DNA of 64,000 nt, taken from contig OZ287750.1 of assembly GCA_965649765.1 (NCBI GenBank), positions 23,126,001 through 23,190,000 of the forward strand, written 5' to 3'. Shown one piece after another: positions 17,855-57,730 of the stretch; position 1 is the stretch's first letter; the number at the start of each line of letters is the position of its first letter. The position numbers were made by a program, and so were the translations under genes. The DNA is from Bispira polyomma. Its lineage: Eukaryota. Under the pieces are notes generated by a model. The model was given only the letters and a program-made list of their open reading frames with translations. It did not search any database and had not been told where the DNA came from.

Positions 17855-18044
17855 CAGCAAAACCTCTATTATATCCGAACTTCCAATTATCTGAATATTC
17901 CATTTTATTAACTCAATTCCACTCTCCCAAATTTTTATTTTCTTATTGATTAATACTGAAATACCTTTTCTATTTTATGAACATTCTATTATCCAAACAA
18001 AATATTACTCTCCCAACATGTTTCGGATAATAGAGGTTCCACTG
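17855..18044. mobile_element. Tigger-like MITE, family A (inverted)
   Basis: CAGCAAAACCTCTATTAT ... CGGATAATAGAGGTTCCACTG-TA. Confidence 0.75.
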
Positions 18045-18088
18045 TATTGCACCTGATATGATACACAGGATATATACAAGCCACCTAC

Positions 18089-18253
18089 GAGTCTGGTTAA
18101 GGTCAGAGTAAGGCCCAAAGGCCTCGTGTGTGACATCCACTTCCCCTTGTAGCCAAGTGAAGATCGCTTGGGGCCTGCTGTCATGTGACGTACATGTGAG
18201 GTTCATCTCGGAGTCTCTCTCTTGCTTGGATACACTTACATGACTGGGTCGCA
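18089..18253 (-). CDS. Two-Ig-domain protein, first half of Ig domain 2 (CD80-like C2-set)
   Basis: TATTTCAG acceptor and C|GTAGGT donor, phase 1-1; VRPSHVSVSKQERDSEMNLTCTSHDSRPQAIFTWLQGEVDVT... (LTCxS..SRPxAxxTW). Confidence 0.85.
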
Positions 18254-18811
18254 CTGAAATACACAACAGTTAAAGTACCATTTTCCATACACATGTGTAG
18301 GTAATCCGTTTCCACGAGGCAATATTATTTATTTTATAACATACCTTTTTATCAGCCTGATATTGATTTCATTATAAAAAGGGCGCCACCATCTTTAAAA
18401 GGGGCACCGCCATCTTAAAAATAATATGTAAGGCCTTTATGGAATGGTTAAAAGCAATCGACCTGTCCAAACTGAGGCATGTCCAAAATATTTTTGTAGG
18501 GGTGCCAAGTGGGCCTGAGTATAAGTAGCCATTAATAATATTATGCATTTTTAACGTGCTTTAGTGATGCTAGGCATCTTCTAAAGGGCAACAACAGAAT
18601 CAGTGGGCCAATCATGTAGTCCATAGATATAGCGAGGTCGTAAGGAAAGTAAGTAACGGAAATATGAGGTGACAATTATATTTTACACACAATGTGCATT
18701 ATTGCAAGTCTTAAATATATTATTGTTCCATAATGTTACGTGTACTTGATTGTGAAATAACATTCATAAATAATATGAATGAATTAATAAATAAATTGAA
18801 GTGTATACACT

Positions 18812-28113: not shown

Positions 28114-28224
28114 CTAGGTTTTGCCCATTTTGTCGAAAAATTCTTGTCTAATGTGCTCCCTTTCTTCTGGTGGAGGGAGGTGTGGCTTTATTCCAGCTTT
28201 CTGTCTTTGTTTACTCACTTGGTT
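28114..28224 (-). CDS. CHCHD7: CHCHD7/COX23 coding exon 3
   Basis: TTTTCAG acceptor, phase 0; NQVSKQRQKAGIKPHLPPPEEREHIRQEFFDKMGKT*, resembling the human CHCHD7 C-terminus (QRRKNGVKPFMPTAAERDEI). Confidence 0.9.
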   Translation of the reverse strand, partial: NQVSKQRQKAGIKPHLPPPEEREHIRQEFFDKMGKT

Positions 28225-28244
28225 CTGAAAATATAATGTAAATG

Positions 28245-29003
28245 TTTTTACTTCTATAGGACCAGAATGGATGACCAGGCATCCTCTGTGGCACACATCC
28301 CAATTAGTAAGCAAAAGAATAGTTCAACAGGGAAAAAGGTTTGTGATCAGAGTTCAGCAGACGCAAGTTAGGTGGAAAAGCAAGTTGATACAGATGAACT
28401 TTTTTCCTTAAGACTGTAATCCATATCACGGTGCAAATATAGGGACACTTAGCTGGTGCTGCAACTTTGAAAGAATTTGAACCAGTCAGTTTTATTTTTG
28501 TAAGAAACCAGATAAGAGGTGGAGAGACAATTTCCTCTAGTGAGATTGCTGAGAGGCAACACAGATAATAAATAAACTGGCTGCTACTGCAATGGTTTGA
28601 TTGATTGATTAGGGTTTAACGTCGCTTTCAACACATTGTGTAGGTCATATCATGACGGGGAGATTTTTTTAAACCAGCCAGTCTTTTGGGTAAAAAACCA
28701 GAGGTGGAGAGATGATTTCCTCTAGGGAGATTGCCGAGAGACAACATAGATGATAAGTAGGCTGGCTGCTGCTACACTAGTTTGATTAATTGGGATAAAC
28801 GTCCCTTGCAACGCATTGTATACGTCATATCACGATGGGGAGTTAACTGGTAGGGAAAAGCAGGGCATACTAGTTGGTCAAGATTCTATACTGTAAACCA
28901 CCAGGCTTTCGCAAGTGACTGCCAACTTTCGCAGCTGAGATTAGAACCTACAGCCTCAGAGGTAGAAGGTGAGTGTGTTATCCACTGCACTACTGAGCCG
29001 CCT
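28245..29003 (-). mobile_element. Composite of SINE and L2 3' fragments with an internal duplication
   Basis: On the minus strand: SINE (29003-28785), L2 piece (28775-28670), SINE tail (28660-28600), L2 3' end (28590-28245). Confidence 0.7.
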
Positions 29004-29405
29004 CTGAGAATTCTTTAGGAACCTACAGAAGCAAATTCAGGTTATACATTAAAGAAAAAAAAATTATCTTGTAATTCCAAGACAGCTGTTGATTTGTTTT
29101 GTCAATCGAGGTCAACATGTCTCTACTGCCTGATGGATTCATAAAGAGCTCATACATGATAGATAAAGGGATTTTGTTAATTTTCCTTGAAAAAGATATT
29201 TGGATTTTGTCCTGATCTTCCCCAAAAAATTTGAGATTTTGTACATTAGGATTTTGTCCGTTCACCAAGGAAAACACCCACCCACAACAAAAAGGACCAT
29301 GTTTGACAACCACTTACAGCTGTAGAATAAAAACAATTATGTACTTTTGCAACTTTACTGTCATACTTTTGGCTTCTTTCTACAAGTTTACACCATGGTA
29401 CATAC

Positions 29406-29501
29406 CCAGAATTTGACGCATGATTTGTAGTTTTCAATGTAGAGGTGACACTGTCTTGTATCTTCATTCATAGCTATGCAATCTATTGATTTGTGTGATT
29501 C
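29406..29501 (-). CDS. CHCHD7: CHCHD7/COX23 coding exon 2 (twin CX9C)
   Basis: TTTACAG acceptor and TGG|GTATGT donor, phase 0-0; ESHKSIDCIAMNEDTRQCHLYIENYKSCVKFW gives C-X9-C-X9-C-X9-C when joined to exon 1. Confidence 0.92.
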
Positions 29502-29569
29502 CTGTAAATAAGGTGATTCAAAACATTAGTCTGCCTCGAGTTTTGTGACTAGAAAATACAAACTTCTCT

Positions 29570-31370
29570 GATTGATGACACCCCATTGGGTGGTGTTTTA
29601 CACAACATTGTAGTGTCAGAAAAAGAAGTACTTGACCAGATATTAATGCCTAACTGTAACAAATCATATGGCCCCGATGGTCTTTCACCTAAATTTATAA
29701 AATTAACAAATCGCTCATTGGTAAAGCCGTTAACAAAATTATTCAACCTTTCATTGTCTACGGGGAAAGTTCCTAAGCTGTGGAAACAAGCTAATGTGGT
29801 ACCCTTACGTAAAAAAGACAGCAAAAATGTGTTAGGACACTATCAACCTGTATCTCTTCTCAGTATTTTGGGAAAGATGTTGGAGAGAATAGCTTTTAAA
29901 TACTTATATAATCATTTTAAAGACATTTTTTCACTATCAGTTTGGCAATCAGGGTTTTTGCCAGGTTCTTCAACAATTACCCAATTAATCGAAATATATA
30001 ATACATTTTGCTCAGCGGTATCTCAAAACAAAGAAATACGAGTTGTGTTTCTTGATATTTCTAAAGCCTTCGATCACGTTTGACATTGGGGATTGTTATT
30101 CAAACTGAAGAAATGAGGTATCAGTGGTACATTACTCCAGTTGTTTGAAGATTACCTAAAAGATAGGGTTCAACGAGTGGTTATCAATGGTCAATTTTCA
30201 GACTGGAGCAAAATATTTGCTGGGCTACCACAGGGATCAGTACTAATTTTGTTTTTAGTTTTTATTAATGATATTACAGAAGTTGTAAAAAATTGTAGCT
30301 TAAGACTTTTTGCTGACGATACTTGCCTCTTTATTGAAGTCGACAATCAAATAGATTCAGCAATTAAATTAAATGAGGACCTAAGAAATATTGAAAAATG
30401 GTCTCAGAATTGGCTTGTTACATTCAATCCTTCAAAAACCGAATCAATGATTATTAGCCTCAAACATCACAAAAGTGAAAATCCAAGGTTGTACTTGCAC
30501 AACACACCAATTGTAAATGTGGCTCAACATAAACATGTTGGGCTTTGGCTTGAGGAAAACTTGGGCTGGCATATGCATATACATGAAATCAACACTAAAG
30601 CTGGAAAGCGATTGAACATGCTAAAGCAGTTAAAATATCAAGTCAGCAGAATTACACTGGAAAAAATGTACTTTGCTTTTATTAGACCCATTTTGGAATA
30701 TGGTGATGTTGTTTGGGCTGGGGCTAGCCACTCTGATTTACGCATACTGGGATAAAACTTTGGAATGAACTTGACAACTCACTCAAATATGCAAAAACTC
30801 TCTCTACATTCAAATACATATTACGCAAATGACAATTTAAGGGTAATCAAAAAATAGTTAAGTTTCGTAAAAAAATTGTTTGCTGAAGGTGAACGGTACT
30901 GGAATGCAATTCATGCTAGAATGCGCATGAACTGTAGCCCTCTAAGGGACACCTCACAAAATATTTACATGTCTTGAGCAATTGCACTTGTGACTGTGGC
31001 TTATCTGATAAAAATATTACACATTTCCTATTAGATTGTATAAACTATGCTATACCCAGATAGTTAATGTTAGCTAAGTTATATGATATTCCTGCTGTTA
31101 CAACTGAAACTCTATTAATTGGTAGCCTTTACTTGACATTTGAACAAAACCAGACAATATTTCGAGCAGTTTAAGAATTTTTAAGGGAAACAAATCGGTT
31201 TCATAGTTTTTGATTGCTACAGTGCCCACACACCATCTTATCTTTTTATACATCATTCTGTTATTTTTCTCTTTTGTTTCTTTTGTATATATATCTTCTT
31301 GTGAGAAGGCTTTATAATAATCTTTTTGATTTTGCCTGATTGTTTTGTTCCAATAAAATATTGTTTATGA
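29570..31370 (+). mobile_element. 5'-truncated CR1-group LINE (disrupted reverse transcriptase) with 10-bp TSD
   Basis: GPDG, FLDISKAFD, PQGSVL and FADDT RT motifs with stops; C-terminal CxCG...HFLLDC; AATAAA near the 3' end; TSD AAACTTCTCT at 29560-29569 and 31371-31380. Confidence 0.9.
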
Positions 31371-31951
31371 AAACTTCTCTCTTACAAGCAAATACTAGTT
31401 GTTTGAAAAAATATTTAATTAAGTAGAATTATTGCACAACACTGAAATGTGTGTACAAACTCTGAAATGCTTGTAATGTCACCCTATCCACATCATAACA
31501 ATATTATTTTGGTCTAATTAAACAATTATCTTTTTTTGCATTAAAAATATTATCAAATTTTTGTGGAGGTCCATATCTTGTTTACAGATGCAGTACCACA
31601 ACAAATACCTCTAATTAAGCAGCCGTTATGTCCCTTTTTGTGATACCGTCGTTAAAATAACAGCAAGGCATCTTGCTAAATAGAAACAGATTATTCGGTC
31701 TAAGTACATAGTAAATTACTGTGTCAGATTTAAAACGATCTGCTACAGTAAAGAACTCTGTCCCTCAACACGCGTACATCAGTTAATCAAAGCATTGTTG
31801 AGGATAAAAAACTCGGTCTACCCCTGTCCCTAAATGATAAAAAGGGCTTTTCTGACAATAACGGATTGATTACTATTGCTTGCTTGTCCCATTTGTAAAC
31901 AATAGTCATATATTAGCATATTGGAAATAACAATTTTGTGTATGTGAGTGA

Positions 31952-32076
31952 TACACAGGTGGCGCTGGCTTTGGCCTACCCTTGGCCTCGGCCACTTCAA
32001 TGTTTACATTGACTTTCTTTTGATTTTACTGGGTGGCCTAGGCCAAAGGTAGGCCGAAGTCAGCACCACCTGTGTA
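31952..32076. mobile_element. Short hairpin MITE
   Basis: TACACAGGTGGCGCTGGCTTTGGCCTACCCTTGGCCT ... AGGCCAAAGGTAGGCCGAAGTCAGCACCACCTGTGTA; diverged copy at ~6480-6600. Confidence 0.8.
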
Positions 32077-32265
32077 CAGTAATAAAGTAATTTAATGCAG
32101 ATTAGGTTGCCTGTCATAAATCGGCCACCCCAATATAATAAATGTGTCATAACTTAAATTGATTTTATTTGTCTAAGAAAATACTGTAGTTTATTTGTTG
32201 TCAGTAATTTTTGCTATAAGCATAATTGCTAGGCAAGCAAGAACTGTCAGTGACTGGAATAGCCC

Positions 32266-32502
32266 ACTGCTTGTGGTTATAATTCGGTTGCCTGTCATCA
32301 ATTGGCCGCCATACAATAAATGTGTCACAACTTCAACTTAATTAAATTTATTGGCCTAAATACTGTACTTCCTTGAATATTAGTATTGTAATTGTTTTAC
32401 TTGATTCCTATGGTCCGTTTTATTCCTAGATTGTTAATAATTAACATTTAGAATGTGACGGGCGATTTACAACAGGCGGCCGAATTATAACCGGAGGCAG
32501 TA
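32266..32502. mobile_element. MITE with ~35-bp TIRs
   Basis: ACTGCTTGTGGTTATAATTCGGTTGCCTGT ... ACAGGCGGCCGAATTATAACCGGAGGCAGT. Confidence 0.7.
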
Positions 32503-32527
32503 CCACTGAGCCTGTATAACTGCAACA

Positions 32528-32822
32528 CCACAAAGTCGTTTAAGTTGGAAACTAGACCTGTCCATGCTCACCCGCACCCGTGTCCGCAGCTGTGTATATA
32601 TTCACGGGTGAAAGCTATATAGTTAACCATTTCCACCCGCATCCGTAAAGAAAGCTTCCAAACCCTTTCTCTATGGATACGGACATGAATGACGTAAATC
32701 GATTGTTTTTGCTATATGTGTGGTTAAATGTCTGGTTGTCACCCGTGAATATCTATGCGGGTGCGGACACGGGTGCGGGTGAGCACGGACAGGTCTAGTT
32801 CCCGACTTAGACGGCCCTGTGG
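32528..32822. mobile_element. MITE with ~60-bp TIRs
   Basis: ACTAGACCTGTCCATGCTCACCCGCACCCGTGTCCGCA ... TGCGGACACGGGTGCGGGTGAGCACGGACAGGTCTAGT. Confidence 0.85.
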
Positions 32823-33049
32823 CAGCACCTCAAGCATTGTTTGGACATCTGATTTTAACCTGCACCACACACCTTGCACCTTGTAAATATGATTTTAAAA
32901 AGCACAACGTTAACCACAGAAGATGCACAATTGACGAGATGGATGATGTCCTTTGTCAGCTAAACGCTGTGAATGTAAAGCAGTAGCCGCTTGAAACGCT
33001 TCAGAATACTATATTATCGCCCACAAATTAAATTATCATGCAAGCTCAC

Positions 33050-33166
33050 CTTGACACATGGGTTTCTTATCACATCGTCTTTACGACGCGCTTTACTCAA
33101 CTTTGTAGGAGGTGGTGCAGATTCTTTGCCTTTTGAAATAATACCATTCATGGTTGAATTTGACAT
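33050..33166 (-). CDS. CHCHD7: CHCHD7/COX23 coding exon 1
   Basis: ATG at 33166 with an in-frame stop upstream (alternative ATG at 33151); MSNSTMNGIISKGKESAPPPTKLSKARRKDDVIRNPCVK, then AAG|GTGAGC; NPC motif as in CHCHD7. Confidence 0.88.
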
Positions 33167-33199
33167 GTTCTTTTCTCAAAAAGTTGACAATTGCCACAA

Positions 33200-33700
33200 A
33201 CCATATTTGGTGTTTGGCGTCACGAAAACAAGAAGTGTTGTTCATTTTCGCAATTTTACATCTGAAACATACTTTTTCCAATAAACGACAATAAAATACA
33301 TTAAAAAAGTATCCAATAAATTACAATAATCATTTAATTGATTTATTCCAGTTGGTTTCATTTTAAAAAATTATAATTTGATACAAAATATTTGTGTCTT
33401 GATCGCAGTCTCGCGAAAACTTCCCCCATAATGCACTTTGACTTGTGTCCCAATTATTTGACGAGTGGATTATATATTTATTAAATATTGGATTGCATCG
33501 ATATCTAAGCATCTTTGTGTATATTTGGCTGACGTGAATGATGCATATTCCCATTATAAATGACAGATGGTAATTAGATAAGACACGTAACAACCAGTAG
33601 TACACAGTATTTTTGCCTGTAAAGGGCCCCTCAATTAAGCCGACGTTTAAACCCCATTTGGCCCCAATTTTACAACCGATCACTTTACCCTGGCTTGTAT
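33200..33700. promoter_or_regulatory. Putative bidirectional promoter for CHCHD7 and PR-PLAG
   Basis: Lies between divergent genes, locally CpG-richer; TCTCGCGAAA 33409-33418, CATCGATA 33496-33503, TGACGTGA 33530-33537; possible first-exon donor GTATGT at 33697. Confidence 0.55.
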
Positions 33701-34695
33701 GTAACGGGTTGGTTTTCCACTTTAGCGAAACTGAAACTGGGAAAATCTGTTATCCACCAAAATCTTTGGCAATAATTAATATAAACAAGCTGATTTTGTT
33801 GTTCAATTTTTTTTTTAATTCTTGAAACATAAAATTAACAACAAAACAGATAGTAAGTTCAACATTTATAGTCTTGCAAAATGAAATATGTTCTATCAGT
33901 GTCCATATATACAGTCAAACCACTTGAAGTACTAGAACTCTTATAAGTGGAATTATCTGTTAAGTAGAAGTTATTTTAATGTCCCATTACTATATTTTGA
34001 ATAAAAACTTACCCTGTTGAAAAGAATTAATGTATATTATTATGTATAGTCGGTAAAATAGAGGTGGCATTCTAGTATAAACAATAGTAGCAAAAAATAA
34101 GTTTGAGAGGGTGAAATTAAAATCGTAAAATCAAATATTCTGATAATAGAGGGTCAGATAATAGCGGTTCTACTGTAATATATATGGTTTTTACTGCTAT
34201 GCATTTCAATTGATGTGTGTGTAGAAATTTAAATGTTTTTTTGGTGGGTATACAAGAACCACAGATCTGAAATTAAGACCCCTTCTTGTAACATAATTGA
34301 CGTTAGTGATCAGGGCAATTACGAGTACATATATCTATATAGCTATGTCTTATAACATAACTTTTCTTAGCCTTTTGAATGGTATAGGATTGTGCATTTG
34401 TACTTTAATTTGAAGCAAACTATCAAACCTGTTACTTTATTTCCATATTTTTGTCAATTATATGTGCATCTTTTATTTTACATAAAAAGTTTGAATGTGA
34501 GTCATATTCTGACTTGTATATTGTATTTTTCACATAAATACATGTATACTATATTCATATTTACTAGACTATTACAATTCAAACTGGCAAAATTATAATT
34601 AAGGTATACTTTTACATATATGTTGTGACATGTGTGAAAGTTAATAATGCATACATTGTAAATTTTTTTTTCTTTTTCAGTTATTTGGCAAACCT

Positions 34696-34743
34696 ATGGT
34701 AATTAAGCTAGGTGGAATGATTTCTAGCAACCCCATTCTATAG
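34696..34743 (+). other. 15-codon uORF in frame with the PR-PLAG start
   Basis: ATG 34696, MVIKLGGMISSNPIL, TAG at 34741-34743, 12 nt before ATG 34756; inside the exon that begins at 34681. Confidence 0.55.
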
Positions 34744-34755
34744 GGACGAGAAACC

Positions 34756-34813
34756 ATGATTCCTTCCTCTCAACCAGATAATCCATTAGAAATCAAGTTT
34801 GATGACAAACTAT
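34756..34813 (+). CDS. PLAG1: PR/SET-domain PLAG-family zinc finger protein, coding exon 1
   Basis: Acceptor ends at 34680; ACCATG, MIPSSQPDNPLEIKFDDKL, then T|GTAAAT in phase 1, forming the W of LWCEEC. Confidence 0.72.
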
Positions 34814-35316
34814 GTAAATATTTTTTGTAGTTTTCTTTTTGTTATACTCAAATTAATTCGCTCCTGTAAACTAAGAATAACATATTATAATTAATGTACC
34901 TATTTTTACATATTTATCGTTCTTATGACTGTTATTTTAACACTTTTTTTAATACTTTAATTATACGTGTATATGTATTAGTTGCAAGTCTTATTATTGT
35001 GCCTGTTTCATTATATCATTAATGTAGTGAATACATCAAGAACAATTTCGCTTGGAAATAGTGTTTTTAAAATTTATATATACATGTATATATATCTTTA
35101 TTCCCCCCATCTACAAAGTTTCTAAGAAACTTATTGACAAGTAGATAGGGTTTGGAAATAAAAAAATAATTTTTACACTTTAAGTTTAGTACTTCAGGCA
35201 TTGTGAATGGAATGTTATTTCGTCCAAGGTTTACCATCTGTTGTTTGTTTTTAGGGAAAAGTAGAAAGAGGGTGAAAAATTGTTCTGTTAATTTTAATAC
35301 CTATTTTAATAAATAG

Positions 35317-35472
35317 GGTGTGAAGAGTGTGGCCAAAGTTTAGAGCAAGAATGTAAAACACATGGTTGCCACAGCATCATACGGGACAAGGCCATTCCAT
35401 CCCGAGCAAAGCTGACCACACCTCATCAGTTAACAGTGAGAAGGCTGGAGCTACGAACAGCTAACAACCATG
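35317..35472 (+). CDS. PLAG1: PR-PLAG coding exon 2 (PR zinc knuckle)
   Basis: WCEECGQSLEQECKTHG...IRDKAIPSRAKLTTP (PRDM knuckle CxxC-x7-CxxHG and SRAxxxxP); donor G|GTTTAG is weak but phase-compatible. Confidence 0.85.
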
Positions 35473-35715
35473 GTTTAGATTCTTCTAATACTGTAACAAT
35501 AGAACCTCCTATTATCCGATCATGCTGGGAGAGAGCAAAATTTTGTTCGGATAATAGAAGGTCCAATAAACTGTAAGAGGTATTTTAGTGTAAAATAATA
35601 GGAAAACATGAATTTCGGAGAGTAAAAATGTGTTCTCATAAAATTGAATATTTATATAACAGAAGTTCAGATAATAGATGTTCTACTTTCTAGCATATAA
35701 CATTCTTGCATGACA

Positions 35716-35932
35716 TGGTGGTGTAGTGGTAACATACTCTCCTACCACATCTACAGTTGTGGGTTCGAATCTCAGCCCAGGCATATGTGTGGGAAATTTG
35801 GTAGTCGTCTTGCTGAAGGCTTGGTGGTTTGAAAAAAAGCTAGACCTGCCATGTTTTACTTCTCTCAAACAGTGAACTGGCTGTCATGATATGACTCAAG
35901 ACATGTTCAAGTTGATGTTTAATTCAAAACTA
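35716..35932 (+). mobile_element. tRNA-derived SINE
   Basis: TGGTGTAGTGG A box, GGTTCGAATC B box, GATATGAC...GTTTAA tail. Confidence 0.75.
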
Positions 35933-35939
35933 AAGTAAC

Positions 35940-37158
35940 ATGACGAGTTGTTCGGTTTTTGTCTATATCTGACTCGGTTCTTCAATGGATTGAATCCTAT
36001 CTTGAATGCCGTGATCAAATCATCAGGGTCAACGGAGTTGAGTCATCTCTTTTTAATCTCCCTTTCGGTCTCCCTCAAGGTTCTGTTCTAGGGCCCCTTC
36101 TGTTCTCACTGTACACTACTCCCCTCGCAAGTATAATATCCTCACACCACAATATTAGCTATCACTTCTGTGCAGATGACACACAGATCTACTGCTCCCT
36201 CACTCCCAAAAATTGTTGTCAGATCCTGGAACAGCTTTCTAGCTGCCTGTCTTCGATTGAATCTTGGATAAATAATTCAAAATTGAAACTCAACCCTGAC
36301 AAAACAGAATTCCTACTTATTGGCTCCAAACATCAGAGGGAAAAGGTTCTTGACTTCTTCCCTGCTACTCTCCTTGGTAACAGCACTGTTCCTGCTGACA
36401 GTGCGAAGAACCTAGGAGTTACTTTTGACTCTGACTTCTCCTTCAAAAAACATGTCTCGAATATCTGTCGTTCCTGCTACGGCAACATCCGTGACTTCCG
36501 CAGGATTCGATGACATTTAACCCAAGAAAATGCCATTGCAGTGGCAAATGCCCTGGTATCAAGTCGACTAGATTACTGTAACTCACTACTATATGGAATT
36601 GGAAAGGGCCAATGAAACAAACTACAGAAAATACAAAATAACCTGTGCAGAATAGTAAGCCATGCTGGCCCTTGCACTAACACTACTTCCCTGCTGAAAC
36701 AATTACATTGGTTACCTATTGAGTTTTGCATTAAATTCAAGGTAATTGTCCTCATTTTTAAGACAGTCTATGTACATCAGCCTGCCTATTTATCATCTAT
36801 GTTGTCTCTCAGCAATCTCACCAGAGGCAATCGTCTCTCCACCTCTGGTTTCCTACCAAAAAAACAAGCTGGTTCAAAATCATTCTTAGTTGCAGCACCT
36901 GCTGAGTGGAATAGCTTCCCTACCAGTCTTCGGACTGAGACAAGCATCATGGGTTTTAGAAAAAGGCTCAAAACACATTTGTATCAGCTCGCTTTTCCAC
37001 CTTAGCATGCCATATGAGGGTCACGACTGAATCTCCGATCACGAACCTTTTCTGTCTACCGGACTATGCTCTTGCACACTGACTAGGATATGAGCCACAG
37101 AGGATGCCTGGTCATCGATTGTGGCGCTATAGAAGTAAAAACATTAACATTAACATTA
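35940..37158 (+). mobile_element. 5'-truncated L2-clade LINE (RT C-terminal part, with stops)
   Basis: PQGSVLGPLLFSLY, CADDTQIY, LKLNPDKTE, SRLDYCNSLLYG, LHWLPI; (AACATT)n tail. Confidence 0.9.
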
Positions 37159-37582
37159 TATAGCTATGTGGACACATTTATCTAAAACGATAATGCACAC
37201 CGGCTGTTGTTACTAAGACTTCCTGTATGTAAACAAACATTACAATGTTTTATAAATGTTCTGTGTTATGATTATTTTCAACACTCTAATTGAAACTTAT
37301 GCAGTCATGTTAGAATTGAGATAAATTAACCTACTCAATCCCAGTTTTATAATACTGGTCGGGTCATATTACTCATTGCATTACTCATTGCATTACAGAA
37401 CTTACAGACAGAAATTAATATTGAAAGGACATGCTACTTTATGCCTCTGAATTAAAGTACAGAATAATGTGACTCGAACACTATTATGACTGCCGTGTAA
37501 TGTTGTAACCATTTTGAAGCATTGGTAGCACAAAGTTAAAACTAGTTCTACTAACAAAGAGCACTTAACCTCTTGTTTTTAG

Positions 37583-37695
37583 TGTATGGTACTTTTGCAA
37601 AGAAAATCATACAGAAACGGACGAGATTTGGACCATTTGAAGGCGGTCATACAGAACAGTGGAATCACCAGCGAGAAGATAGACTTACTCTTAAG
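37583..37695 (+). CDS. PLAG1: PR-PLAG coding exon 3 (PR/SET)
   Basis: VYGTFAKKIIQKRTRFGPFEG...LTLK|GTATTG; PRDM10/15-like KRTxFGPxEG. Confidence 0.92.
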
Positions 37696-37734
37696 GTATT
37701 GTATTGTAGATGTTTAATGTGCTTTATTGATGGT

Positions 37735-38015
37735 AGGTACCTTCCAAAGCGCAACATTGACAGCACCTGCTGAGTGAAATAGTCTCCCTACTAGTCTTCG
37801 CAATGATACAAGGATTACAGGCTTCAGGAAAAAGCTCAAAACACATTTGTATAAACTCGCTTTTCTGCCTTAACTTTTATCTCCTGGTCACGACTGAACT
37901 CTGGTCACGGACCTTTTTCCCTGTTTTTTACGACTATTCCTTTGCTTAATGAATTGGATGTGCACTGCAGCTAGAGGATGCCTGGCCATCGATTGTGTAA
38001 AAATATTAACATTGA
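37735..38015 (+). mobile_element. L2 3' fragment
   Basis: Matches 36893-37150. Confidence 0.8.
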
Positions 38016-38774
38016 TAAACTATTAATCATGATCCTAATACATCGCCAATTTTGTCACCAGTAGATTTATTTAAACATATTTTTTTGTTTGGTGATAATA
38101 GTATGTATTAAAAAAAAAATTCCATAATAGACAGTACATGTATTTTTTATAAAAGAAAATAAAGTCTGAGAGCATGTACCTTTTTTGGTGATTAAAAGAC
38201 GGGATCGCCGTTGAATATAATGGAGATATATGCCATTCTTTGCGATACAGAAGAGCCCCTATCATTTTGGTGGTCGTACTGATGATGACTTCCTTCTGTC
38301 AATCAGTAATGATTGTTGGTTCTGGTTGTGGGTTTTTTTGCCCTTTAGAATTTGTTACAACATAAAATAAGTGCTAAAAAGGTCTGATATAATTATAATA
38401 ATATTATTCAAACACCTTGGGAGACTGATAATCTGTGTGGTTAATTGTATGTTCATAAAAAAGACGAGGCACTTCACTATAACGCCACAGGAAAATAAGA
38501 ATTTGAAACTAAGTTCAGAAAATTGAATATTCGGATAATAGAGGTGCATGTAATATACTGTAAAGCCTAAAATATCCTTTTCTGTTTGTATTGTATTTTG
38601 CATTTTTAACACATTTTATTGATAAGAGGCACCATCTAAAACGCAACAGCAGAATCAATTTACCAATCGAGAAGTCAAATTAAAATATTTTTTTGCACCT
38701 CCTGTCATCTGAACAAGATCTTGCTATTTCAGTTAGTTCGGATAGTAGAGGTTCTTGCTATGATCCATTTGTAG

Positions 38775-38927
38775 CTGTTTGCGGGTGGGGGCGAGGATTC
38801 CTACTTGGACTGTGCAGATGAGAACAGCTGTAACTGGATGATATTCGTGAGGCCGGCAAACAAACCTGAACATCAGAACATGGTGGCCTTCCAGTATCGA
38901 GGACAGATCTACTTTGTCTCCACTAAG
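38775..38927 (+). CDS. PLAG1: PR-PLAG coding exon 4 (PR/SET)
   Basis: LFAGGGEDSYLDCADENSCNWMIFVRPANKPEHQNMVAFQYRGQIYFVSTK; AG/GT, phase 0-0. Confidence 0.95.
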
Positions 38928-40628
38928 GTAGGTGTCATTGGGTGTTTTTGCAAATCTCCACTATTGCAAATATCCAGGGCACGTATTCTCCAAAAAAACT
39001 ACTGTATTTGGAAGAGGCTATTTAGAAGTTCCTGTTCACCTAAATTAACCTTGACTTTTCTGACTATTCATTTATAAGAGCTTTTATTGCTGAATTTAAA
39101 TATATACAGTCAAGTTTTACACAGCCTCACTCTAGCCAGAGTTATGGGCACCTCAGATTTTAACTTAAGTTTGACTTAAGGCTTTAGTAACATAAACACA
39201 AAAAACGATCCCGATAACCACGTTGTGTGTGCTTGAGCTTCTCAGAAACTGCACAAATTTTCCTTGGTGGCCTTAAACTTGATTTATAGATAACATATTT
39301 ACATTTTCATGGGTGGAAATGATAAAGAATGACATATATTTTAATTATATACTAATTCATATATTTTCGTATCATTTTAAGTGGTATCTTGAGACATAAA
39401 TACATATAGCAGTGTGTAATATTGTAACTAAAATGGGTAATATTTTTAAAGTACATGCTTTACAAACGTGACACAATTCATTTTCCAAGGAGGGATCAAT
39501 ACTGAAGTATTGTACATGACTAGAAAAAGGAAAACATCAGCAATATTTTGAATGAATTCGTTTTTTAAAAAAAGTACAAAAACGGGGATAATTTTAGAAA
39601 AACTTCAAAGTTACATTCTTCTAAATAGAAAGATATTTTGTATTCTTTGTTTATGTAACATAATAAGGCATATTTAAAAATGTAATTCATTCAAAACAAT
39701 ATACACATGTTTTAAAGTTGTGTAGTCTATATAATATCCTTATATATGCTGGATCAATACTTGTATTGTGTCAAAACAGAAAGGGCTCTCTGCGAGAAAT
39801 GTTTACAAATATGACGTTCTATGCAGAGTTTGAAACTGTGTGACGTCACAATACAAGAATCCTCGTATGGGTGTTTTTATGGTTTTTTAGCAAAGTATTG
39901 AAGTTTTAAATTGTCTGCACATATAAAAATAGTTAAAAACATATCTAAAGTGTCCTTTTAAAGCCATCATAGTTGTGATACAGAGTAGAAATGGCCATTC
40001 GTAAAGCATTATACTTTATCGCGACGTGTTTTTGTGTTTACGTTACTAACGCCTTAAACAAGAGATCTTTGGCCACTGGGGCAGTATTCACAAAATAGCC
40101 ATGACTTTGTCTTAGATCTAGTATACTTTTGTGCTAGGTTCAGGACAATGTCTAGACTAAGCCCTTTTGTGGATACCATCCCTGGGCCCGTATTCACGAA
40201 AGGACTCGGCCAAGTCTTAGGCTTTACTATAGTTATTAACAAAAATACCTCTTCTTTTGTATATGAACATTCTATTATTTAAACATATTCATTGTCACTC
40301 CCCCTAAAGTGTTCTAATAAGAGATACTGTACTGTGCATCTATGTATCTTATTTATTATAGTGGCATGCAACATACTTTACATTAATACGTACAATACAA
40401 AATAGCAAAACCAATCTTACCCAGCCTTTTGGTGGGCTTATATGTTGCAATTGTGTTTGACTAGTTAGTGTTTCTTAATAAATCCCTTTTGTTTATTCCA
40501 AGTACTTTCTACATATATTGTGAGTTCTTTTGGACAATACTGCATTAGTTTATAAATATCAAAGTCATGAAACCCTGGAAAAGTTTACTCATTTTATCGT
40601 ACTGTACAACTCTCTGTATTCACTGTAG

Positions 40629-40770
40629 GCTGTTGCCCCAGAGGAAGAGCTGAGGATCTGGTATGCCAAAGACTACGCAACACAGATGGGTGTGGATCTC
40701 CTGACGAGCTACGAAACTCCATCACCTCCCTCTCCCCCGTCACCATTCACAGCGAGTAACCTGCGTATAG
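40629..40770 (+). CDS. PLAG1: PR-PLAG coding exon 5 (end of PR/SET)
   Basis: AVAPEEELRIWYAKDYATQMG...; ELxxWY motif; phase 0-1. Confidence 0.92.
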
Positions 40771-41455
40771 GTAGGGGTCAGCATAACAAAAGTTGGAAGC
40801 TGCACATTACCTGACTTTTTACACATTGTCAAATAAACTTTTATAAATTTGGGCCCAAAGTCCCATACTCCTGTGAGTCGGCGGGTGATAGCGCTAATCG
40901 TCACAGCCTTACTCCTATTTGACCATATAAGGAAATTATTGTTCTTGTATTAGTGTATCATTAATTATTAATTTGATGCCGTCATTAGTGTTTAAAAACA
41001 TCTGTGTGAAAATGTTGATGTGCATCCAGACCCTTAATTGTGCATACAGACAAGCAAATTTCAAACCAAAACAAGTCAACATTTTCTAGGTAAAATAATA
41101 CAGAAAAAAATATAAGTACAAGATAAATATAGGTAAAGTAAAATATAGAGCAATGTTTCTTGTGCCATTGTTACAAGATTATACATTGTCTTAGCATTTA
41201 TTGGCAAAAAAATGTTTAAGAAATTCAGTGTAACCTCTATTTTTCTCAATTTCTGTTATCCAAATATTCGATTTTTTATGAATTCATTAAATACTTGGCA
41301 TTTTATTCACAGATTATCACTCTGCCAGTCTGTTCAGGTAATAGAGGTTCTACTATAATTGTATAATGTAATAAATTTATTTTCTGGCCAAGGTAAGTAA
41401 TTTAATGTAAACTTTGTTAAAATGATACCCCTGGAATTATTGTCTCTTTTTTTAG

Positions 41456-42944
41456 ATGAAGAGTTTTTAAAGCCCCCTACAAAAAAGAACAATAGATTGA
41501 GTGCAGAAAAAGGGAGGAAATATGTGATGGCCACAACTGAAGTTGCCGCAAAAGATGAACAAAGTGAAAACCTCATAACTTTAGCCAACATTGCCTTGGA
41601 TCCACCATCTTCAACCAGTTATACAGACCTGCAAACTGTGCAGTTCCCTTCTGTTAGTACCCCAGTACCTCTAGGTATTTTGTCTGTTCACCAAGGTGGT
41701 AGTCCCATGTCTGTACCACTAGTTACTACAGCTGCAGGAATCACACAGGTAGCATCAGGTAGTCAAGGTACGCTATCTCTACCACAAGGTATCACTTCTG
41801 TAGTGCCAACAGTAGCTCAAGTTTTACCATCATTACCTTCAGATAATGTGTCAGTAAACACACAAGTACCACAAGATTCTCAGTCTCTTTACACAACTTC
41901 AGTACCAGCTGGAAGTGTAGTGGTACCCCAAGCTACTGCATCACTGAACTCATTAGTACCACAAAGTACAACATCTCTACTGCAGATAGCTGTTTCAGTG
42001 CATCCAACCTCATTACCAACAGGTACTTTTTTACCGACACAAGGTACTCTGTCTGTGCCGCAAGGTACCTTTGCAGTACCATCAGACCATACTGCGGCTG
42101 TATATCAATCTGCAGCAATACAGAGTGCCAAGATAGACGATGCAGGAATTTTGACCATTGAAGAAAGCGCCATTGCTTCAGCTCCGACAACGTTAAACGT
42201 TGAAATATTGACTGATGAGGGAGGGGGGCCTATGATAAATCAGGTGCAGCTAAAGACTGCAATGAAAGACTCTTGGGAAAAAGGTGACATGATGGATAGT
42301 GAAAATGTTGAACTGACCATAGATGAATCTGATACCATTATTTTGACTTTAGACAGTGAGCCAGGTGCAGATCATGGGCTCAGTGATATAGATGATGCAG
42401 AAGTGGATGAATACATTGATACATCATCTGAAACTTGTAGTTATTGTGGGCAAAGCTTCCCGGCTCAAATCTATTCTAATCACGACTGTCCACGACAGAA
42501 GAAAGTGGGTCTGCGGAAAAGGAATATCACTAACAGGAGAATTGGCAAGGCTAAAGTGGATAATAAGCCCAAGAGAACTGCGAAACTCAAGTATGGACAA
42601 GCCAGAAAGCGCAGGGGATCGCTCACAATGGCAGTGAATAAGATGACAACAAAAAAAAGTTCAAAGAATGGAGGTAATGGTGAGGTTAACAGTCTGAATG
42701 AAGCAGATATTGTAGAGGCTTCTTCTGAAGGTGCTATTATTAACAATGACAATATGGTCCAAAGGGAAACCCAGAAATACCAGGACATCAGAAAGATCAA
42801 GGGCAGTAGGAAAAGGAAGTCGGGAGTCGTCAGAAAGAAGATACCACCTCCGTACTTTGAGTGTGACAGGTGTGAGATGATATTTAGTAGTCTAGACAAA
42901 CTACAAACCCACTTTTACTCCCACACAGGGGAAAAACCTTTTCT
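41456..42944 (+). CDS. PLAG1: PR-PLAG coding exon 6 (S/T/P/V-rich linker, basic clusters, zinc finger 1)
   Basis: Within the 508-aa ORF; TTTTTAG acceptor in phase 1; ends FECDRCEMIFSSLDKLQTHFYSHTGEKPF, CT|GTAAGT. Confidence 0.93.
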
Positions 42945-44974
42945 GTAAGTACTTCTGTGTTTTACTATGCATAGTCGATTTAACATGTAACGGTAGAACT
43001 TTGATTATCTAAGTACCTTGGGTCAGTGGTTCTGATATAAGGAATTGTTCATAAAATATAAGAGACATTGTACAATAAAAACAATAGGTAGGTGTACATT
43101 TTGGAAATTAAATAAATACATTCGAACATTCCTGTTATCAGAAATGGCACATAAAATAAAAAGTTTTAACAAGTGAATGACAGTTTGTCATATGTAGGAA
43201 AAACTACATTTAAAAATATTTAACAACTAGCCAACGTGACGTCCCTATCTGATAATAGAGGTTCGGATAATAGAGGTTCTACTGTATTTTCAATGGGTTA
43301 CTGTTTGTCAAAAATGTAAAGTTGAATGCCAGAGTATCTCTTTTCATTATTCACCCAGTTCTGTTGGTTGATTTGTTTGTCACTAGAATTACACACACAA
43401 AAACACAATTTTTTCATGACATTTGGTAGAAGAATGGGGCATAGGCCAAAGAACAATTCTTTAAATTTATGCAATGGATCTTGACAGAAGGACAGATTCT
43501 TATCTTATGACTAGGCTCTGTGGCCTTAGCATCTGTGATATAAAGGTGTGTACAGAGCTAATCTCAGAGGTGGATGGCATCTGTGCTATCTTTTTTGGTT
43601 CGAATATTGTGGCTGTATAGATGTCCCACAATGACTTTTATTCTGATACTGAGGTCAAGGTCTATTGAGATATTGACCTTTTTCCTTGTTGCCACCATAA
43701 AAATTAATGGACATCTATTTAAATTTTGATTTCATTGAACTTACAACATACAGCCAATTTGACCTCATTTTCAACGTGCAAGGTCAGCCATCTTGAATTT
43801 TGCATCTTTTTAAAAACTTTCTGTAGACTCCAAATAGAGTGATTTAAACCTCATTTTCGATTGGCAGGGTGTATTTTACGATATACGGCAACTTTTCCAA
43901 AATTTTACAATTGAGTGGGCCATCTTGAATTTCTCTGGAAAACAGTGTCTTAAGCTTTCTTTCGACGGGAATGTATTGCACACATTGAATTTCTGTGTCA
44001 TTATCGTCAAACAGCCTTTAGGGAAACTGCGCAGAATAATGCAACTTCTCAGATATCTTCAGGTTTAGGCGACCATCTTCTTCTGTTCGTTTGCATTGCC
44101 ATCTGGACATTTAAATTTTATACTTGCTGCAATAACCTTTTGTTCAACTCATCATATTGGTTTCTCGGGGAAGCATTGTTTTTTTCTTACAAAAGCGATT
44201 CTTTAGATTTAAAAAGCGTATTAACTGGTAAAACATTATATATTGTGCAGTTTTAAATGCTTGCTGAACAGAAAAAAATTAATCCATACAAAACACTAAT
44301 TCATACCAAAGTTACATAAAGTTTTAACAATGCCTTTTAAATACAATAAACACCGTAGCATTTCAATAATTAGCTTGATATTCCTGTTGCATAGATACAG
44401 GGAAGCTTTAGAATAATCAATCGAATAATACAACTGTTGTTTGTAGGCTCGGTTGTTCTATGGAACCCATGTAGTCAATAGGAGAACACTTAAACCTTAA
44501 TCTCTTTACATTTAATGGCATTGTATAAGTTTAAGGTGAGCAGCTAAGTGAGTAATGTGTAACTAATGAAGTAATCAGGTTATAAGTCGCAAACTATTAT
44601 TACTGGTAAGTTGATGTTTTGGTCTCATAAGTTGTGCAGTTTCTTTTTAAAATGCCACAACTTGTTCTATTTCCATAAAAGTACTGTCTACCAATTGGGT
44701 CATTTGGCCATGTGGCCCCCATAGGCCACTCCATTCTGTTCTTCTTGTCACTGTTGTGCCTTGTCTGAGCGCAGTCTAAGTTTCACAAGGTGTCAAAACT
44801 GCTGTTGGAAATTTGATTAAAAGAAATATAGTAAATTGAGTACATTTTGTGTGTTTAGTAAGATAATCTAAATTTCAAAACTGTACAGTTTTTGCTTCCT
44901 ATATAAATACTGCTCTAAGTATATCTCACATATATAGAATATTTATTTCCCAACTTGTTGTGTGGTTATAATAG

Positions 44975-45075
44975 GTGTCCCCATGAGGGTTGTGGAAAGT
45001 GCTTTGTGACTAAGTTTAAGTTGAAGCGGCATGTTACAACACATGGAGAAGGAGAAGTGTTTAGCTGTGCTTACT
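44975..45075 (+). CDS. PLAG1: PR-PLAG coding exon 7 (zinc finger 2 and start of finger 3)
   Basis: CPHEGCGKCFVTKFKLKRHVTTHGEGEVFSCAY; CX4C finger like PLAG1 F2 (CIQQDCTKAFVSKYKLQRH); phase 2-1 fits both neighbouring exons; absent from the ORF track. Confidence 0.92.
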
Positions 45076-45445
45076 GTGAGTAGAAGAACATGTACTATTG
45101 CTTCTGTAACATTTTTTCCTTGGCATTCAACCATTAAAAAAATCTATTTTTACATAAGATTGAAACTTATCTTCAAATTGTGATGTTTTGTTTACTGACG
45201 TTAGTATCATGAACGTATTATCATTGATAGTTTTACTCATTACATACAGATCACAATAAACTGAAAGTTTGAGTTAAAGTTGGTCAATACTGGATATAGT
45301 TCCTAATTTGCTAAACTGCTTACGTTTTATTACAGACCTTAAATTGAAAAATTTAACATCAACAGAATTTTTAATTAGTTAGACATTTGTTTAAAAGAAA
45401 CTCACTGCCTTGTTATATATACTAAAGTTAGTTTTTGAATTTCAG

Positions 45446-47154
45446 GTGATAAAACCTTTCGCAGGAAGGACCATTTGAAGAATCATCTGAAAGTACATGA
45501 TCCAAACAAGGACTTATACACCTGCGATATTTGCTTTAAGGAGTATGCATCTGTGTTTGCCTTTAAGACACACATGGCATTTCACAAGGCAGAGCAAGGA
45601 GAACTCCTGTGTTACGTGTGTTCCCAGGTGTTACCGAATAAAGAAGAACTCCTTCACCACTTGAAAGTCCATTCTGGGGCCAGATCAGTGAAAGACCCCG
45701 ATGCGAAGAAACACGCCTGTAGGTTTTGCGATAAAACATTCTACACAGCCAAGGATGTGCGGAGACATGCAGTTGTCCACACCAAGCAGAGAGAACACAT
45801 GTGCCACCTCTGTCCACGGAGATTCGGAAGGAAAGATCACTTGGTGAGACATATTCGTCTGGCCCATGGCAAAGATGTGCAAGATTCACTAAACATGGAA
45901 ATTCATGCCATAATGCCCCCGGTTATGAAAGTGACGAAGGAAAGCAAGAAGCAAGTGAAGAAGAAACAAAGAAACGTCAGTACAAAGAAGAAGCGGAACT
46001 CAGCCTCTACAGAAAATGGAGAGACTGGAGAAAGTTATAACCCTCCATCATTGGCCTCACTACAGAGTCAGCCAACTATAATACTACCACAAACCAAACT
46101 GGACAACTTGAACTACCAGCCTGAAACAGAGGAAGCAAACACAGACTATGTACTGGTTGAACCCAAAGCACAAGCCAGCTTTTTGCAGAGTCAACCTAAT
46201 TTCACGACCTCGCAGCAACAAGAAGCTCCCATACTGCAGCCAATAGCTAGAGTTCCAAATCTTACAACCCAGCCAACCGACCAGAACTTCATGGAGTTAC
46301 AGTTTATCATTGCTCAGAACTCCATGAACCTGCCCAAGACACAGCAGGTGGTACACCAGATGGCAGAGCAGACACTCGAACAAACTCAGACCATTGTTCA
46401 ACAAACAATTATATCAAAGAGCAAGACACAAAGAAAACCAAGGAAACAAAAGACGAAGGTAAAAGTCAGTACTACTCAGGGAAGTCTACAAGAGCCGCAA
46501 GCTATTCAGCAGGAAGCCACTCAGCCAGTCAGCATGCAACCATCAAGTTCGATAACTTTACCAAATGTCCAAAATATCTTCGAGAATCAGCCACAATTAT
46601 CAGCTCTTATAGGTGGCAGCAGCTTCAATTTGGATAACCTTAGCTTTTCAGGATTAACTTCTTTTAAGCCAAAGATACCATCTAAACAGACACAGGTTCA
46701 AGGTCATATTATCAGTAGAAACAGTGAAAGCCAGGTTAGTTTGAATACAAACCAAGACCAATTGACTAATGTATCGGGGCCAGTGTTTCCGGAATCTGCC
46801 ACAGCTATAAACAGTCAGCAACCGGCAAATATCTTAGAAGGGTCAAATATGCCACTGATATTCTCTATTAATCCAAGTAATATGGGAATGGCTGAGCAAC
46901 TTCAGTTTTATCAGTTTATTGCACCGGCAGACCCAGCCACCAACCAAACCGATCAGATCACAGAGAAGTCAAGTACTTTGGTGGTCAGTCAGCAGCAACA
47001 GGTAAACCAGACTCAACCGGTTGTTTCTGGTTACTCTGCACCAGTTCAAGTAACTAATGCTCAGTTTGAAGGGAATTTTCCACATAGTCTTGTTTCTCAT
47101 GATTCAGAAGCAGTCAGGCTATTTTTCCCAGACGAGCAAAACCCTGTTTTGTGA
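45446..47154 (+). CDS. PLAG1: PR-PLAG last exon (fingers 3-7 and Q/S/T/P-rich C-terminus)
   Basis: RKDHLKNHLKVHDPNK, FYTAKDVRRHAVVHT and RFGRKDHLVRH are PLAG1/PLAGL2 signatures; stop at 47152-47154; AATAAA at 47511. Confidence 0.95.
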
Positions 47155-57055: not shown

Positions 57056-57526
57056 GTAAGCTGTATAGGAATATAATTGATTTTTATGTTAGTGTTGGGT
57101 ATTGGTCTGTTTTTTCCAGGTCGATTAATTGCTTAATTTTCTAACTGAAATATCAAGGTACTCGTCATGCCATCCTTGACTAAATATATCCTGACCTGGT
57201 GAGAATTTGGTTACTTTAGACGTTCAGCATTTAGTATGTACCAATAACCTACATATGACTTCCTGTAAACAAGTCGGTAAACAAAAACAAATTTAAAAGT
57301 GAAACAAATTGCTTTATGTAGCACTAGAACTATATATAATGACATAAAATGGTCAAAATAGTTTATTATTTGTAGTTGGGAAAAGTATTTGTTTAATAAG
57401 CAATTATATAAACTTAAGACTGTTCTGCCTCAATCTTAGAGTATCACCGACACATAATTGACCACCCACTACTAACAAGCATATAAGCAAAGGTTTCAAA
57501 GTCAGTTGATTGTAAATGTATTTCAG

Positions 57527-57730
57527 GAGTTGGGTAACAAAGTAAAAGGAGAAAAGGGCAGCTTTTATCCAATCAAATGTGATCTGAAGAAGGAAGAGGA
57601 AATTCTCGCCATGTTTGGAGAGATTAAAAAACAACATGGCGGAGTAGATGTGTGCATTAATAATGCAGGTGTGAGTCAGGAGGCTACACTGATTAATGGA
57701 GAGACAGAGAAGTGGAGAGACATACTGGAT
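57527..57730 (+). CDS. DHRS11: DHRS11 coding exon 2
   Basis: IKCDLKKEEEILAMF...GGVDVCINNAG...W; phase 0-0. Confidence 0.95.

What the first reader, a model, noticed from the sequence alone, without database searches (positions are those of the whole stretch)
28114..47154. CHCHD7 and a PLAG-family gene are head-to-head in an invertebrate, as at vertebrate PLAG1-CHCHD7
Seen in sequence: a 3-exon twin-CX9C gene (minus strand, ATG 33166) and a PLAG-finger gene (plus strand, ATG 34756) diverge from a gap of under 1.6 kb. CHCHD7 is almost invisible in the ORF track. Established: human PLAG1 and CHCHD7 are head-to-head on 8q12 and share a bidirectional promoter, known from CHCHD7-PLAG1 fusions in pleomorphic adenoma and the cattle stature QTL. 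Inference: the pair predates the protostome-deuterostome split, linking a growth-regulating transcription factor to a mitochondrial intermembrane-space protein under one promoter. The synteny also supports orthology independently of sequence. I cannot confirm whether this has been published.
Basis: partly seen in the sequence, partly recalled or inferred. Interest (0 to 1): 0.9.

Follow-up and report, generated by a model that had tools for sequence, protein, structure and literature searches.

The report
Ancient head-to-head PLAG–CHCHD7 gene pair
A worm keeps the growth-control gene PLAG and the small mitochondrial gene CHCHD7 head-to-head, as humans and cattle do; a second, distant invertebrate does too but the arthropods checked do not, so the pairing behind a human tumour fusion and a cattle height locus is probably as old as bilaterian animals.

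Summary
A 3-exon CHCHD7 (minus strand, ATG 33166, 107 aa) and a single-copy seven-finger PLAG gene (plus strand, ATG 34756) diverge with ATGs 1,590 bp apart. CHCHD7 orthology is strong: PDB profile hit E 7e-21 against 0.15 for the next, and introns as in mite CHCHD7. PLAG identity rests on arthropod homologues named PLAG1-like; no vertebrate PLAG sequence was in hand. The PLAG gene has 8 coding exons (1,306 aa) and an N-terminal zinc knuckle plus PR/SET domain that this finding does not mention (the scan noted it separately on this same DNA, s1-686130). New here: the same head-to-head pair, with the same introns, lies in a second, distant, unnamed non-arthropod genome (ENA ERZ25069859). It is absent at four arthropod loci. 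RPS20, TGS1 and POFUT1 are on the same chromosome but 20–71 Mb away, so only this adjacency survived reshuffling. Best reading: an ancestral bilaterian pair, probably held by a shared promoter, lost in the arthropods sampled. There is no RNA evidence and no invertebrate deuterostome or cnidarian was checked. Ancient head-to-head pairs are a known class; no paper on this pair in invertebrates was found.

The parts
33050..33166 (-). CHCHD7 coding exon 1 (39 aa, ends NPCVK, phase 0; second in-frame Met at codon 7)
   Evidence: same boundary in mite CHCHD7 and in ERZ25069859
29406..29501 (-). CHCHD7 coding exon 2 (Cys 2-4 of the twin CX9C, ends FW)
   Evidence: CHCH PF06747 E 6e-5; PDB best hit 2lqt CHCHD7
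28114..28224 (-). CHCHD7 coding exon 3 with stop
   Evidence: only PDB hit is CHCHD7 2lqt residues 52-77, weak alone, E 0.18; mite CHCHD7 E 3e-6
33167..34680 (.). Gap between the genes: inferred shared promoter, 5' UTRs and PLAG intron 0; CpG o/e about 0.95 over 33001-33700 against 0.45 for the window
   Evidence: rank 27 of 633 overlapping 700-bp windows
33423..33440 (+). ZNF143/Staf (SBS)-like site, next to a TCTCGCGA element at 33409
   Evidence: 11/12 match to the core of the published SBS1 probe, the only such site in 64 kb (probe from PMC3627581); seen by eye first; not found in the second genome
34681..34813 (+). PLAG first coding exon (ATG 34756; acceptor at 34680/34681; 15-codon upstream ORF 34696-34743)
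   Evidence: sequence; frame check
35317..35472 (+). PLAG exon 2: PRDM-type zinc knuckle
   Evidence: matches the N-termini of crustacean and insect PR-PLAG proteins, E to 5e-7, and L010 at 49%; those homologues score PF18445
37583..37695 (+). PLAG exon 3: PR/SET domain, first part
   Evidence: PF21549 positions 14-43
38775..38927 (+). PLAG exon 4: PR/SET domain core
   Evidence: PF21549 E 1.6e-16; PDB best PRDM10, then PRDM4
40629..40770 (+). PLAG exon 5: end of the PR/SET domain
   Evidence: PF21549 positions 102-122
41456..42944 (+). PLAG exon 6: long low-complexity linker and finger 1
44975..45075 (+). PLAG exon 7: finger 2 and start of finger 3
45446..47154 (+). PLAG exon 8: fingers 3-7 and a Q/S/T/P-rich tail with stop
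   Evidence: 294 homologues at E<=1e-20, many of the named ones PLAG1/PLAGL1-like; single copy in the genome

Best explanation
The locus is an inherited bilaterian gene pair: the single pro-orthologue of vertebrate PLAG1/PLAGL1/PLAGL2 (here still a PRDM-type protein with knuckle and PR domain) and the CHCHD7/Cox23 orthologue, transcribed away from one CpG-rich region at about 33.2-33.7 kb. SHOWN: both gene structures, CHCHD7 identity, orientation, the same pair in a second distant genome, and scrambling of other vertebrate neighbours along the same chromosome. INFERRED: (1) the pair predates the protostome-deuterostome split; (2) it persists because both genes use one housekeeping-type bidirectional promoter (possibly ZNF143-driven), so a break between them harms both; a functional link between the two proteins is not needed; (3) after the vertebrate duplications PLAG1 kept the CHCHD7 neighbour but lost the PR domain, PLAGL2 gained POFUT1 as partner, and a PLAGL1 form kept the PR domain in many chordates; (4) the sampled arthropods lost the link.
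For: CHCHD7: profile of homologues plus window exons hits PDB CHCHD7 at 7.2e-21, next 0.15; introns match annotated mite CHCHD7. PLAG; helices of fingers 3, 6 and 7 (RDHN, TKDR, RDHR) are the same in every homologue where the finger could be scored, and these are the fingers that read the PLAG1 site (PMC12764072). Second genome ERZ25069859: CHCHD7 exons 2 and 3 at HMM E 1.3e-9 and 1.3e-6 (E 4.5e-9 and 2e-5 with an HMM built without window sequence), opposite to a knuckle-PR-PLAG gene with the same splice sites. It is as far from the window in the finger tree (path 1.04) as other non-arthropod rows. RPS20 at C3:43.2 Mb, TGS1 at 94.4 Mb and a POFUT1 at 84.2 Mb share chromosome C3 with the pair at 23.16 Mb. 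The chance of one given divergent neighbour after shuffling within C3 is about 1.4-2.8e-4 (rough). Ancient pairs are mostly 5'-5' with short gaps (PMC3514665). An ESM Atlas chordate cluster named PLAGL1 (347 members) carries a PR domain in 98%.
Against: No CHCHD7 next to PLAG in Chamberlinius, Ephemera or Petrolisthes, each of which has a same-strand gene upstream, and no PLAG next to Galendromus CHCHD7; no gene is called within 10 kb of Procambarus PLAG. In the second genome the knuckle exon is 10.7 kb from the CHCHD7 ATG, PLAG exon 1 was not found, and no intergenic DNA or SBS site is shared. No RNA evidence. No vertebrate PLAG was placed in a tree. The host of ERZ25069859 is unnamed and may be another annelid, which would make the protostome side a single lineage. 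Genome-wide, 0.3-0.8 coincidental shared pairs would be expected under my rough assumptions.
Confidence: 0.72

Rival explanations
1. Ancestral adjacency kept without a shared promoter: slow rearrangement in these worms, or separate promoters or enhancers interleaved in the gap or in the introns.
For: Gap of 10.7 kb from knuckle exon to CHCHD7 ATG in the second genome and no shared non-coding sequence; the SBS site is not conserved; repeated loss in arthropods shows the link is dispensable.
Against: Other vertebrate neighbours are scattered over 20-71 Mb, so gene order here has been shuffled; orientation is kept in all three lineages; long 5' UTR introns can explain the distance, since the CHCHD7 ATG exon in the second genome begins at an acceptor.
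Confidence: 0.15
2. Coincidence: the two genes sat on one ancestral chromosome and became neighbours independently in vertebrates and in an annelid or lophotrochozoan ancestor.
For: Four arthropod negatives; no invertebrate deuterostome checked; about 0.3-0.8 such coincidences expected genome-wide; the second host may be an annelid.
Against: Per-pair chance is about 2e-4, against hundreds of known truly ancient pairs (595 in PMC3514665); same orientation; two genomes whose CHCHD7 exons are only 39% identical.
Confidence: 0.09
3. Wrong orthology: the plus gene is a PRDM10/15/4-type gene whose fingers only resemble PLAG.
For: Its PR domain is closest to PRDM10 and PRDM4 in PDB; the Atlas search with the fingers alone returned generic C2H2 clusters.
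Against: Seven fingers; 51-80% identity to the listed homologues against 32-38% to the next finger arrays in its own genome; a PR-bearing chordate PLAGL1 cluster ranks second for the crayfish orthologue.
Confidence: 0.04

Closest known systems
Vertebrate PLAG1-CHCHD7 head-to-head pair (human 8q12, cattle chromosome 14 stature QTL, sheep chromosome 9)
   Same: Same two families, same 5'-5' orientation, short gap; RPS20 and TGS1 on the same chromosome.
   Different: Invertebrate host; one PLAG instead of three; the PLAG carries a zinc knuckle, a PR/SET domain and a 470-aa linker before the fingers (1,306 aa); RPS20 and TGS1 are tens of Mb away; promoter sharing is untested.
Conserved ancestral microsyntenic pairs, CAMPs (Irimia et al. 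2012, PMC3514665), e.g. HSPD1-HSPE1
   Same: Unrelated genes, divergent, short gap, lost in some lineages.
   Different: Seen here in only three lineages (the paper's rule is four); a developmental transcription factor is paired with a mitochondrial gene. The paper's pair list was not available, so I could not check whether this pair is in it.
PLAGL2-POFUT1 bidirectional pair (PMC6642334)
   Same: A PLAG-family gene on a bidirectional promoter with a housekeeping gene.
   Different: Here a POFUT1 is 61 Mb away on the same chromosome, which points to CHCHD7 as the older partner.
PRDM family with zinc knuckle (PRDM4/10/15 type; Vervoort et al., PMC4760075)
   Same: Knuckle + PR domain + C2H2 array.
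   Different: The finger array is that of PLAG; the main text of the PRDM survey never mentions PLAG.

Membership tests
CHCHD7/Cox23 | Twin CX9C motif | tested here: met
   Cys 37, 47, 57, 67; the loop between the motifs is 9 residues, one shorter than in homologues
CHCHD7/Cox23 | Closer to CHCHD7 than to other twin-CX9C proteins (COX17, mS37, COX6B, CMC4) | tested here: met
   Exons 2 and 3 each have PDB CHCHD7 as best hit; profile E 7.2e-21 against 0.15; nearest named protein is mite CHCHD7
CHCHD7/Cox23 | Conserved gene structure | tested here: met
   Both phase-0 introns at the same codons as in annotated Galendromus CHCHD7
CHCHD7/Cox23 | Mia40-dependent import into the intermembrane space; role in cytochrome c oxidase assembly | not testable with these tools
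   From my own knowledge of the family; not tested
PLAG family | Seven C2H2 fingers | tested here: met
   aa 677-878; definition from PMC12764072
PLAG family | Conserved DNA-reading fingers 3, 6 and 7 | tested here: met
   Positions -1/2/3/6 are RDHN, TKDR, RDHR in the window and in the homologues, several of them named PLAG1-like; agreement with vertebrate PLAG1 is from memory only
PLAG family | Supported clade or reciprocal best hit with vertebrate PLAG1/PLAGL1/PLAGL2 | not tested
   No vertebrate PLAG was among the listed hits or in PDB; the tree holds invertebrate rows only
PLAG family | Low-complexity C-terminal activation region | tested here: inconclusive
   418-aa tail rich in Q, S, T, P; no activity test
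Mammalian PLAG1 architecture (fingers at the N-terminus, no PR domain) | N-terminal finger domain | tested here: not met
   Knuckle, PR domain and linker come first. It is therefore filed as a PR-bearing pro-orthologue and not as PLAG1 itself; arthropod PLAGs and a chordate PLAGL1 cluster share the PR domain
Bidirectional promoter pair | Head-to-head orientation with no gene between | tested here: met
Bidirectional promoter pair | Start sites less than 1 kb apart and shared regulation | not testable with these tools
CAMP (Irimia 2012) | Linked in four or more major lineages | tested here: inconclusive

The most novel reading that the evidence does not exclude
The last common ancestor of bilaterians had a CHCHD7-PRDM/PLAG unit on one ZNF143-type bidirectional promoter. 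PLAG genes are an unrecognised PRDM subfamily, and the vertebrate paralogues split the ancestral features: PLAG1 kept the promoter partner and lost the PR domain, while PLAGL1 kept the PR domain in many chordates. The promoter hit by the CHCHD7-PLAG1 tumour inversion and by the cattle stature variants would then have been constrained for over 500 million years.
Probability: 0.45. Interest if true: 0.65.

Novelty: new member of a known kind. Interest (0 to 1): 0.5.

Why it matters
PLAG1-CHCHD7 is a well-studied locus in tumour genetics and livestock breeding, but only in vertebrates. A deep origin would date the arrangement, identify CHCHD7 rather than POFUT1 as the ancestral partner, and give an invertebrate system with one PLAG gene in which to test whether a growth regulator and a mitochondrial assembly factor are co-regulated for a reason. 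The PR domain adds that PLAG factors probably began as PRDM proteins. The class of phenomenon (ancient head-to-head pairs) is well known, with hundreds of cases, which limits the surprise.

Tried and rejected
One slip: window:33366-33683 went into a Pfam scan (no match). Spliced models were searched exon by exon by reference; the joined search was left out, and joined frames were used only inside scripts to check the reading frame and count fingers. A seven-exon PLAG model was rejected once the knuckle exon was found. The CHCHD7 word search gave only four unnamed hits, and both PLAG searches were dominated by arthropods, so no named mollusc, brachiopod or deuterostome locus was reached. The metagenome scan gave 21 PLAG loci, most too short upstream, none with CHCHD7. 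The close relative L001 (80%) was not followed far enough upstream. The Zootermopsis protein was not on record. The SDR gene at 57.5 kb was considered as SDR16C5 (the vertebrate neighbour, from memory) and rejected: its best PDB hit is 1xg5/ARPG836, DHRS11 by my knowledge. No conserved intergenic DNA was found between the two genomes. Three searches for an invertebrate or PR-bearing PLAG returned no papers, a fourth on PLAG phylogeny none, and the microsynteny search showed no listed paper with CHCHD7. The supplements of PMC8851819 lack the gene names, and those of the Irimia and Vervoort papers are not held.
Full report
Observation. The minus strand holds three phase-0 exons (33166-33050, 29501-29406, 28224-28114) with canonical splice sites and a 107-aa open frame with a twin CX9C motif. 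The plus strand holds a gene from ATG 34756 to stop 47154. My first model had seven coding exons. Comparison with homologues revealed an eighth at 35317-35472, giving 1,306 aa without internal stop and seven C2H2 fingers at aa 677-878. The ATGs are 1,590 bp apart. Each gene has one copy in the 1.035-Gb assembly.

The small gene is CHCHD7. Exon 2 and exon 3 each have CHCHD7 (PDB 2lqt) as best hit. A profile of five homologues plus the two exons scores 7.2e-21 on CHCHD7 and 0.15 or worse on COX17, mS37 and COX6B chains. The nearest named protein is CHCHD7 of the mite Galendromus, whose two introns fall at the same codons.

The large gene is a PLAG-family gene with a PRDM front end. The last exon finds 294 proteins at E<=1e-20; the named ones are arthropod proteins, many annotated PLAG1-like or PLAGL1-like. 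The next finger arrays in the same genome are only 32-38% identical. The recognition positions of fingers 3, 6 and 7 are the same in the window and the homologues; these fingers read the PLAG1 site (PMC12764072). Exons 3-5 form a complete PR/SET domain, closest to PRDM10 and PRDM4, and exon 2 is a zinc knuckle. The same architecture occurs in decapods, a mantis shrimp, grasshoppers, Timema and a termite. An ESM Atlas chordate cluster named PLAGL1 has a PR domain in 98% of 347 members (a lead only). The main text of the standard PRDM survey does not mention PLAG (PMC4760075). No vertebrate PLAG sequence was available, so the link to vertebrate PLAG rests on database names, finger number and my memory of the human sequence.

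Host. The genome has erythrocruorin linker exons and no molluscan haemocyanin match (an uncontrolled blank). Its mitogenome has the blocks cox1-cox2-cox3 and atp6-nad5-nad4L-nad4, which I recall as annelid-type, but genes lie on both strands, which is unusual for annelids (PMC7682095). An annelid is the most likely host, as other agents also concluded; this is not proven.

Is the pair conserved? In mammals the genes are head-to-head 500 bp (human) and about 420 bp (sheep) apart, and a variant in the shared promoter affects cattle stature. I walked along an ENA contig (ERZ25069859, ctg23051) whose fingers are 63% identical to the window. It carries a knuckle-PR-PLAG gene with the same splice sites. 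On the opposite strand it carries a three-exon CHCHD7 (ATG at contig 199,237; exon 2 at 209,494; exon 3 at 210,908), with exon E-values of 1.3e-9 and 1.3e-6 and 39% identity to the window exons. The six ORFs tested between the two genes have no Pfam match. In a finger tree this sequence falls with the window in a non-arthropod group (99/98) but is as distant from it as the other members. In arthropods the link is gone. PLAG is preceded on the same strand by an UNC-93 transporter in a millipede, an RRM gene in a mayfly and a gene I read as SREK1IP1-like in a porcelain crab. Mite CHCHD7 lies between a retroelement/STAT and RXYLT1. The HMM that finds CHCHD7 in both positive genomes finds nothing at the three PLAG loci.

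Chromosome context. RPS20 and TGS1, which map with PLAG1 and CHCHD7 on cattle chromosome 14, and a POFUT1, the head-to-head partner of PLAGL2, all lie on the same chromosome C3 as the pair, but at 43.2, 94.4 and 84.2 Mb against 23.16 Mb. A second O-fucosyltransferase locus lies on C9. The linkage group is thus conserved while gene order is shuffled. A rough estimate gives 1.4-2.8e-4 for one given divergent neighbour by chance, and 0.3-0.8 chance pairs genome-wide (gene and pair numbers are my assumptions). A published survey found 595 ancient unrelated pairs, mostly 5'-5'. Inheritance is much more likely than coincidence.

Mechanism. An acceptor at 34680/34681 implies a non-coding PLAG exon upstream. 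CpG o/e is 0.95 over 33001-33700 against 0.45 for the window. At 33423 lies the only site in 64 kb within one mismatch of the core of a published ZNF143 SBS1 probe, beside a TCTCGCGA element. ZNF143 is reported at human bidirectional promoters (PMC3082894) and at nuclear-encoded mitochondrial genes (bioRxiv 10.1101/2024.03.08.583864). I saw these motifs by eye before counting them, they are absent from the second genome, and I did not test for a ZNF143 gene, so they are hints. The most likely mechanism is a shared housekeeping-type promoter that makes a break between the genes costly. Nothing here shows that the two proteins work together. One later Pfam scan included 33366-33683 from that stretch by my oversight.

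Verdict. It is a new example of a known class, and no paper on it in invertebrates was found in the library searched. The distribution is patchy and the deuterostome invertebrates remain unchecked. Interest 0.5.

Noticed in passing
window 35317-40770 (+): The PLAG gene carries a zinc knuckle and PR/SET domain. At the three positions I recall as the catalytic tyrosines of PRDM9, the window has F, F, Y, the ERZ25069859 orthologue has Y, Y, Y and decapods have none, so methyltransferase activity may vary by lineage.
   Followed up: partly
ESM Atlas: A chordate cluster named PLAGL1 (725 aa, 347 members) has a PR domain in 98% of members, which suggests that many vertebrates keep a PR-bearing PLAGL1.
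   Followed up: no
window 34696-34743 (+): A 15-codon upstream ORF, in frame with the PLAG ATG and ending 12 bases before it.
   Followed up: no
G000:C75 (L070, L071): The 15.5-kb mitogenome has protein genes on both strands (cox1, cox2, cox3, nad3 opposite to the rest), unusual for an annelid.
   Followed up: partly
window 29586-30755 and 35959-36513: Broken reverse-transcriptase (LINE-like) remnants in CHCHD7 intron 1 and PLAG intron 2, read from the ORF list; a MITE-like inverted repeat at about 32553-32800.
   Followed up: no
window 57506-57778 (+): Exon of a short-chain dehydrogenase closest to PDB 1xg5 (DHRS11-like by my knowledge), with YY1-like motifs nearby at 57633 and 57814.
   Followed up: partly
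window 17970-18266 (-): Exon with a weak C2-set immunoglobulin match (E 0.001), probably part of the next gene beyond CHCHD7.
   Followed up: no
L015 (JAAUXV010059322.1): A PLAG finger array from a metagenome that resembles vertebrate PLAG (from memory) more than the protostome ones, perhaps an invertebrate deuterostome; the contig has no upstream DNA.
   Followed up: partly
L034 4668-6059 against L035 1-1424: Two similar contigs of ERZ25069859, probably haplotypes, differ by an inversion of about 1.4 kb between PLAG and CHCHD7.
   Followed up: no
G000: At least 29 PR-domain exon matches in the genome, including a cluster on C14.
   Followed up: no
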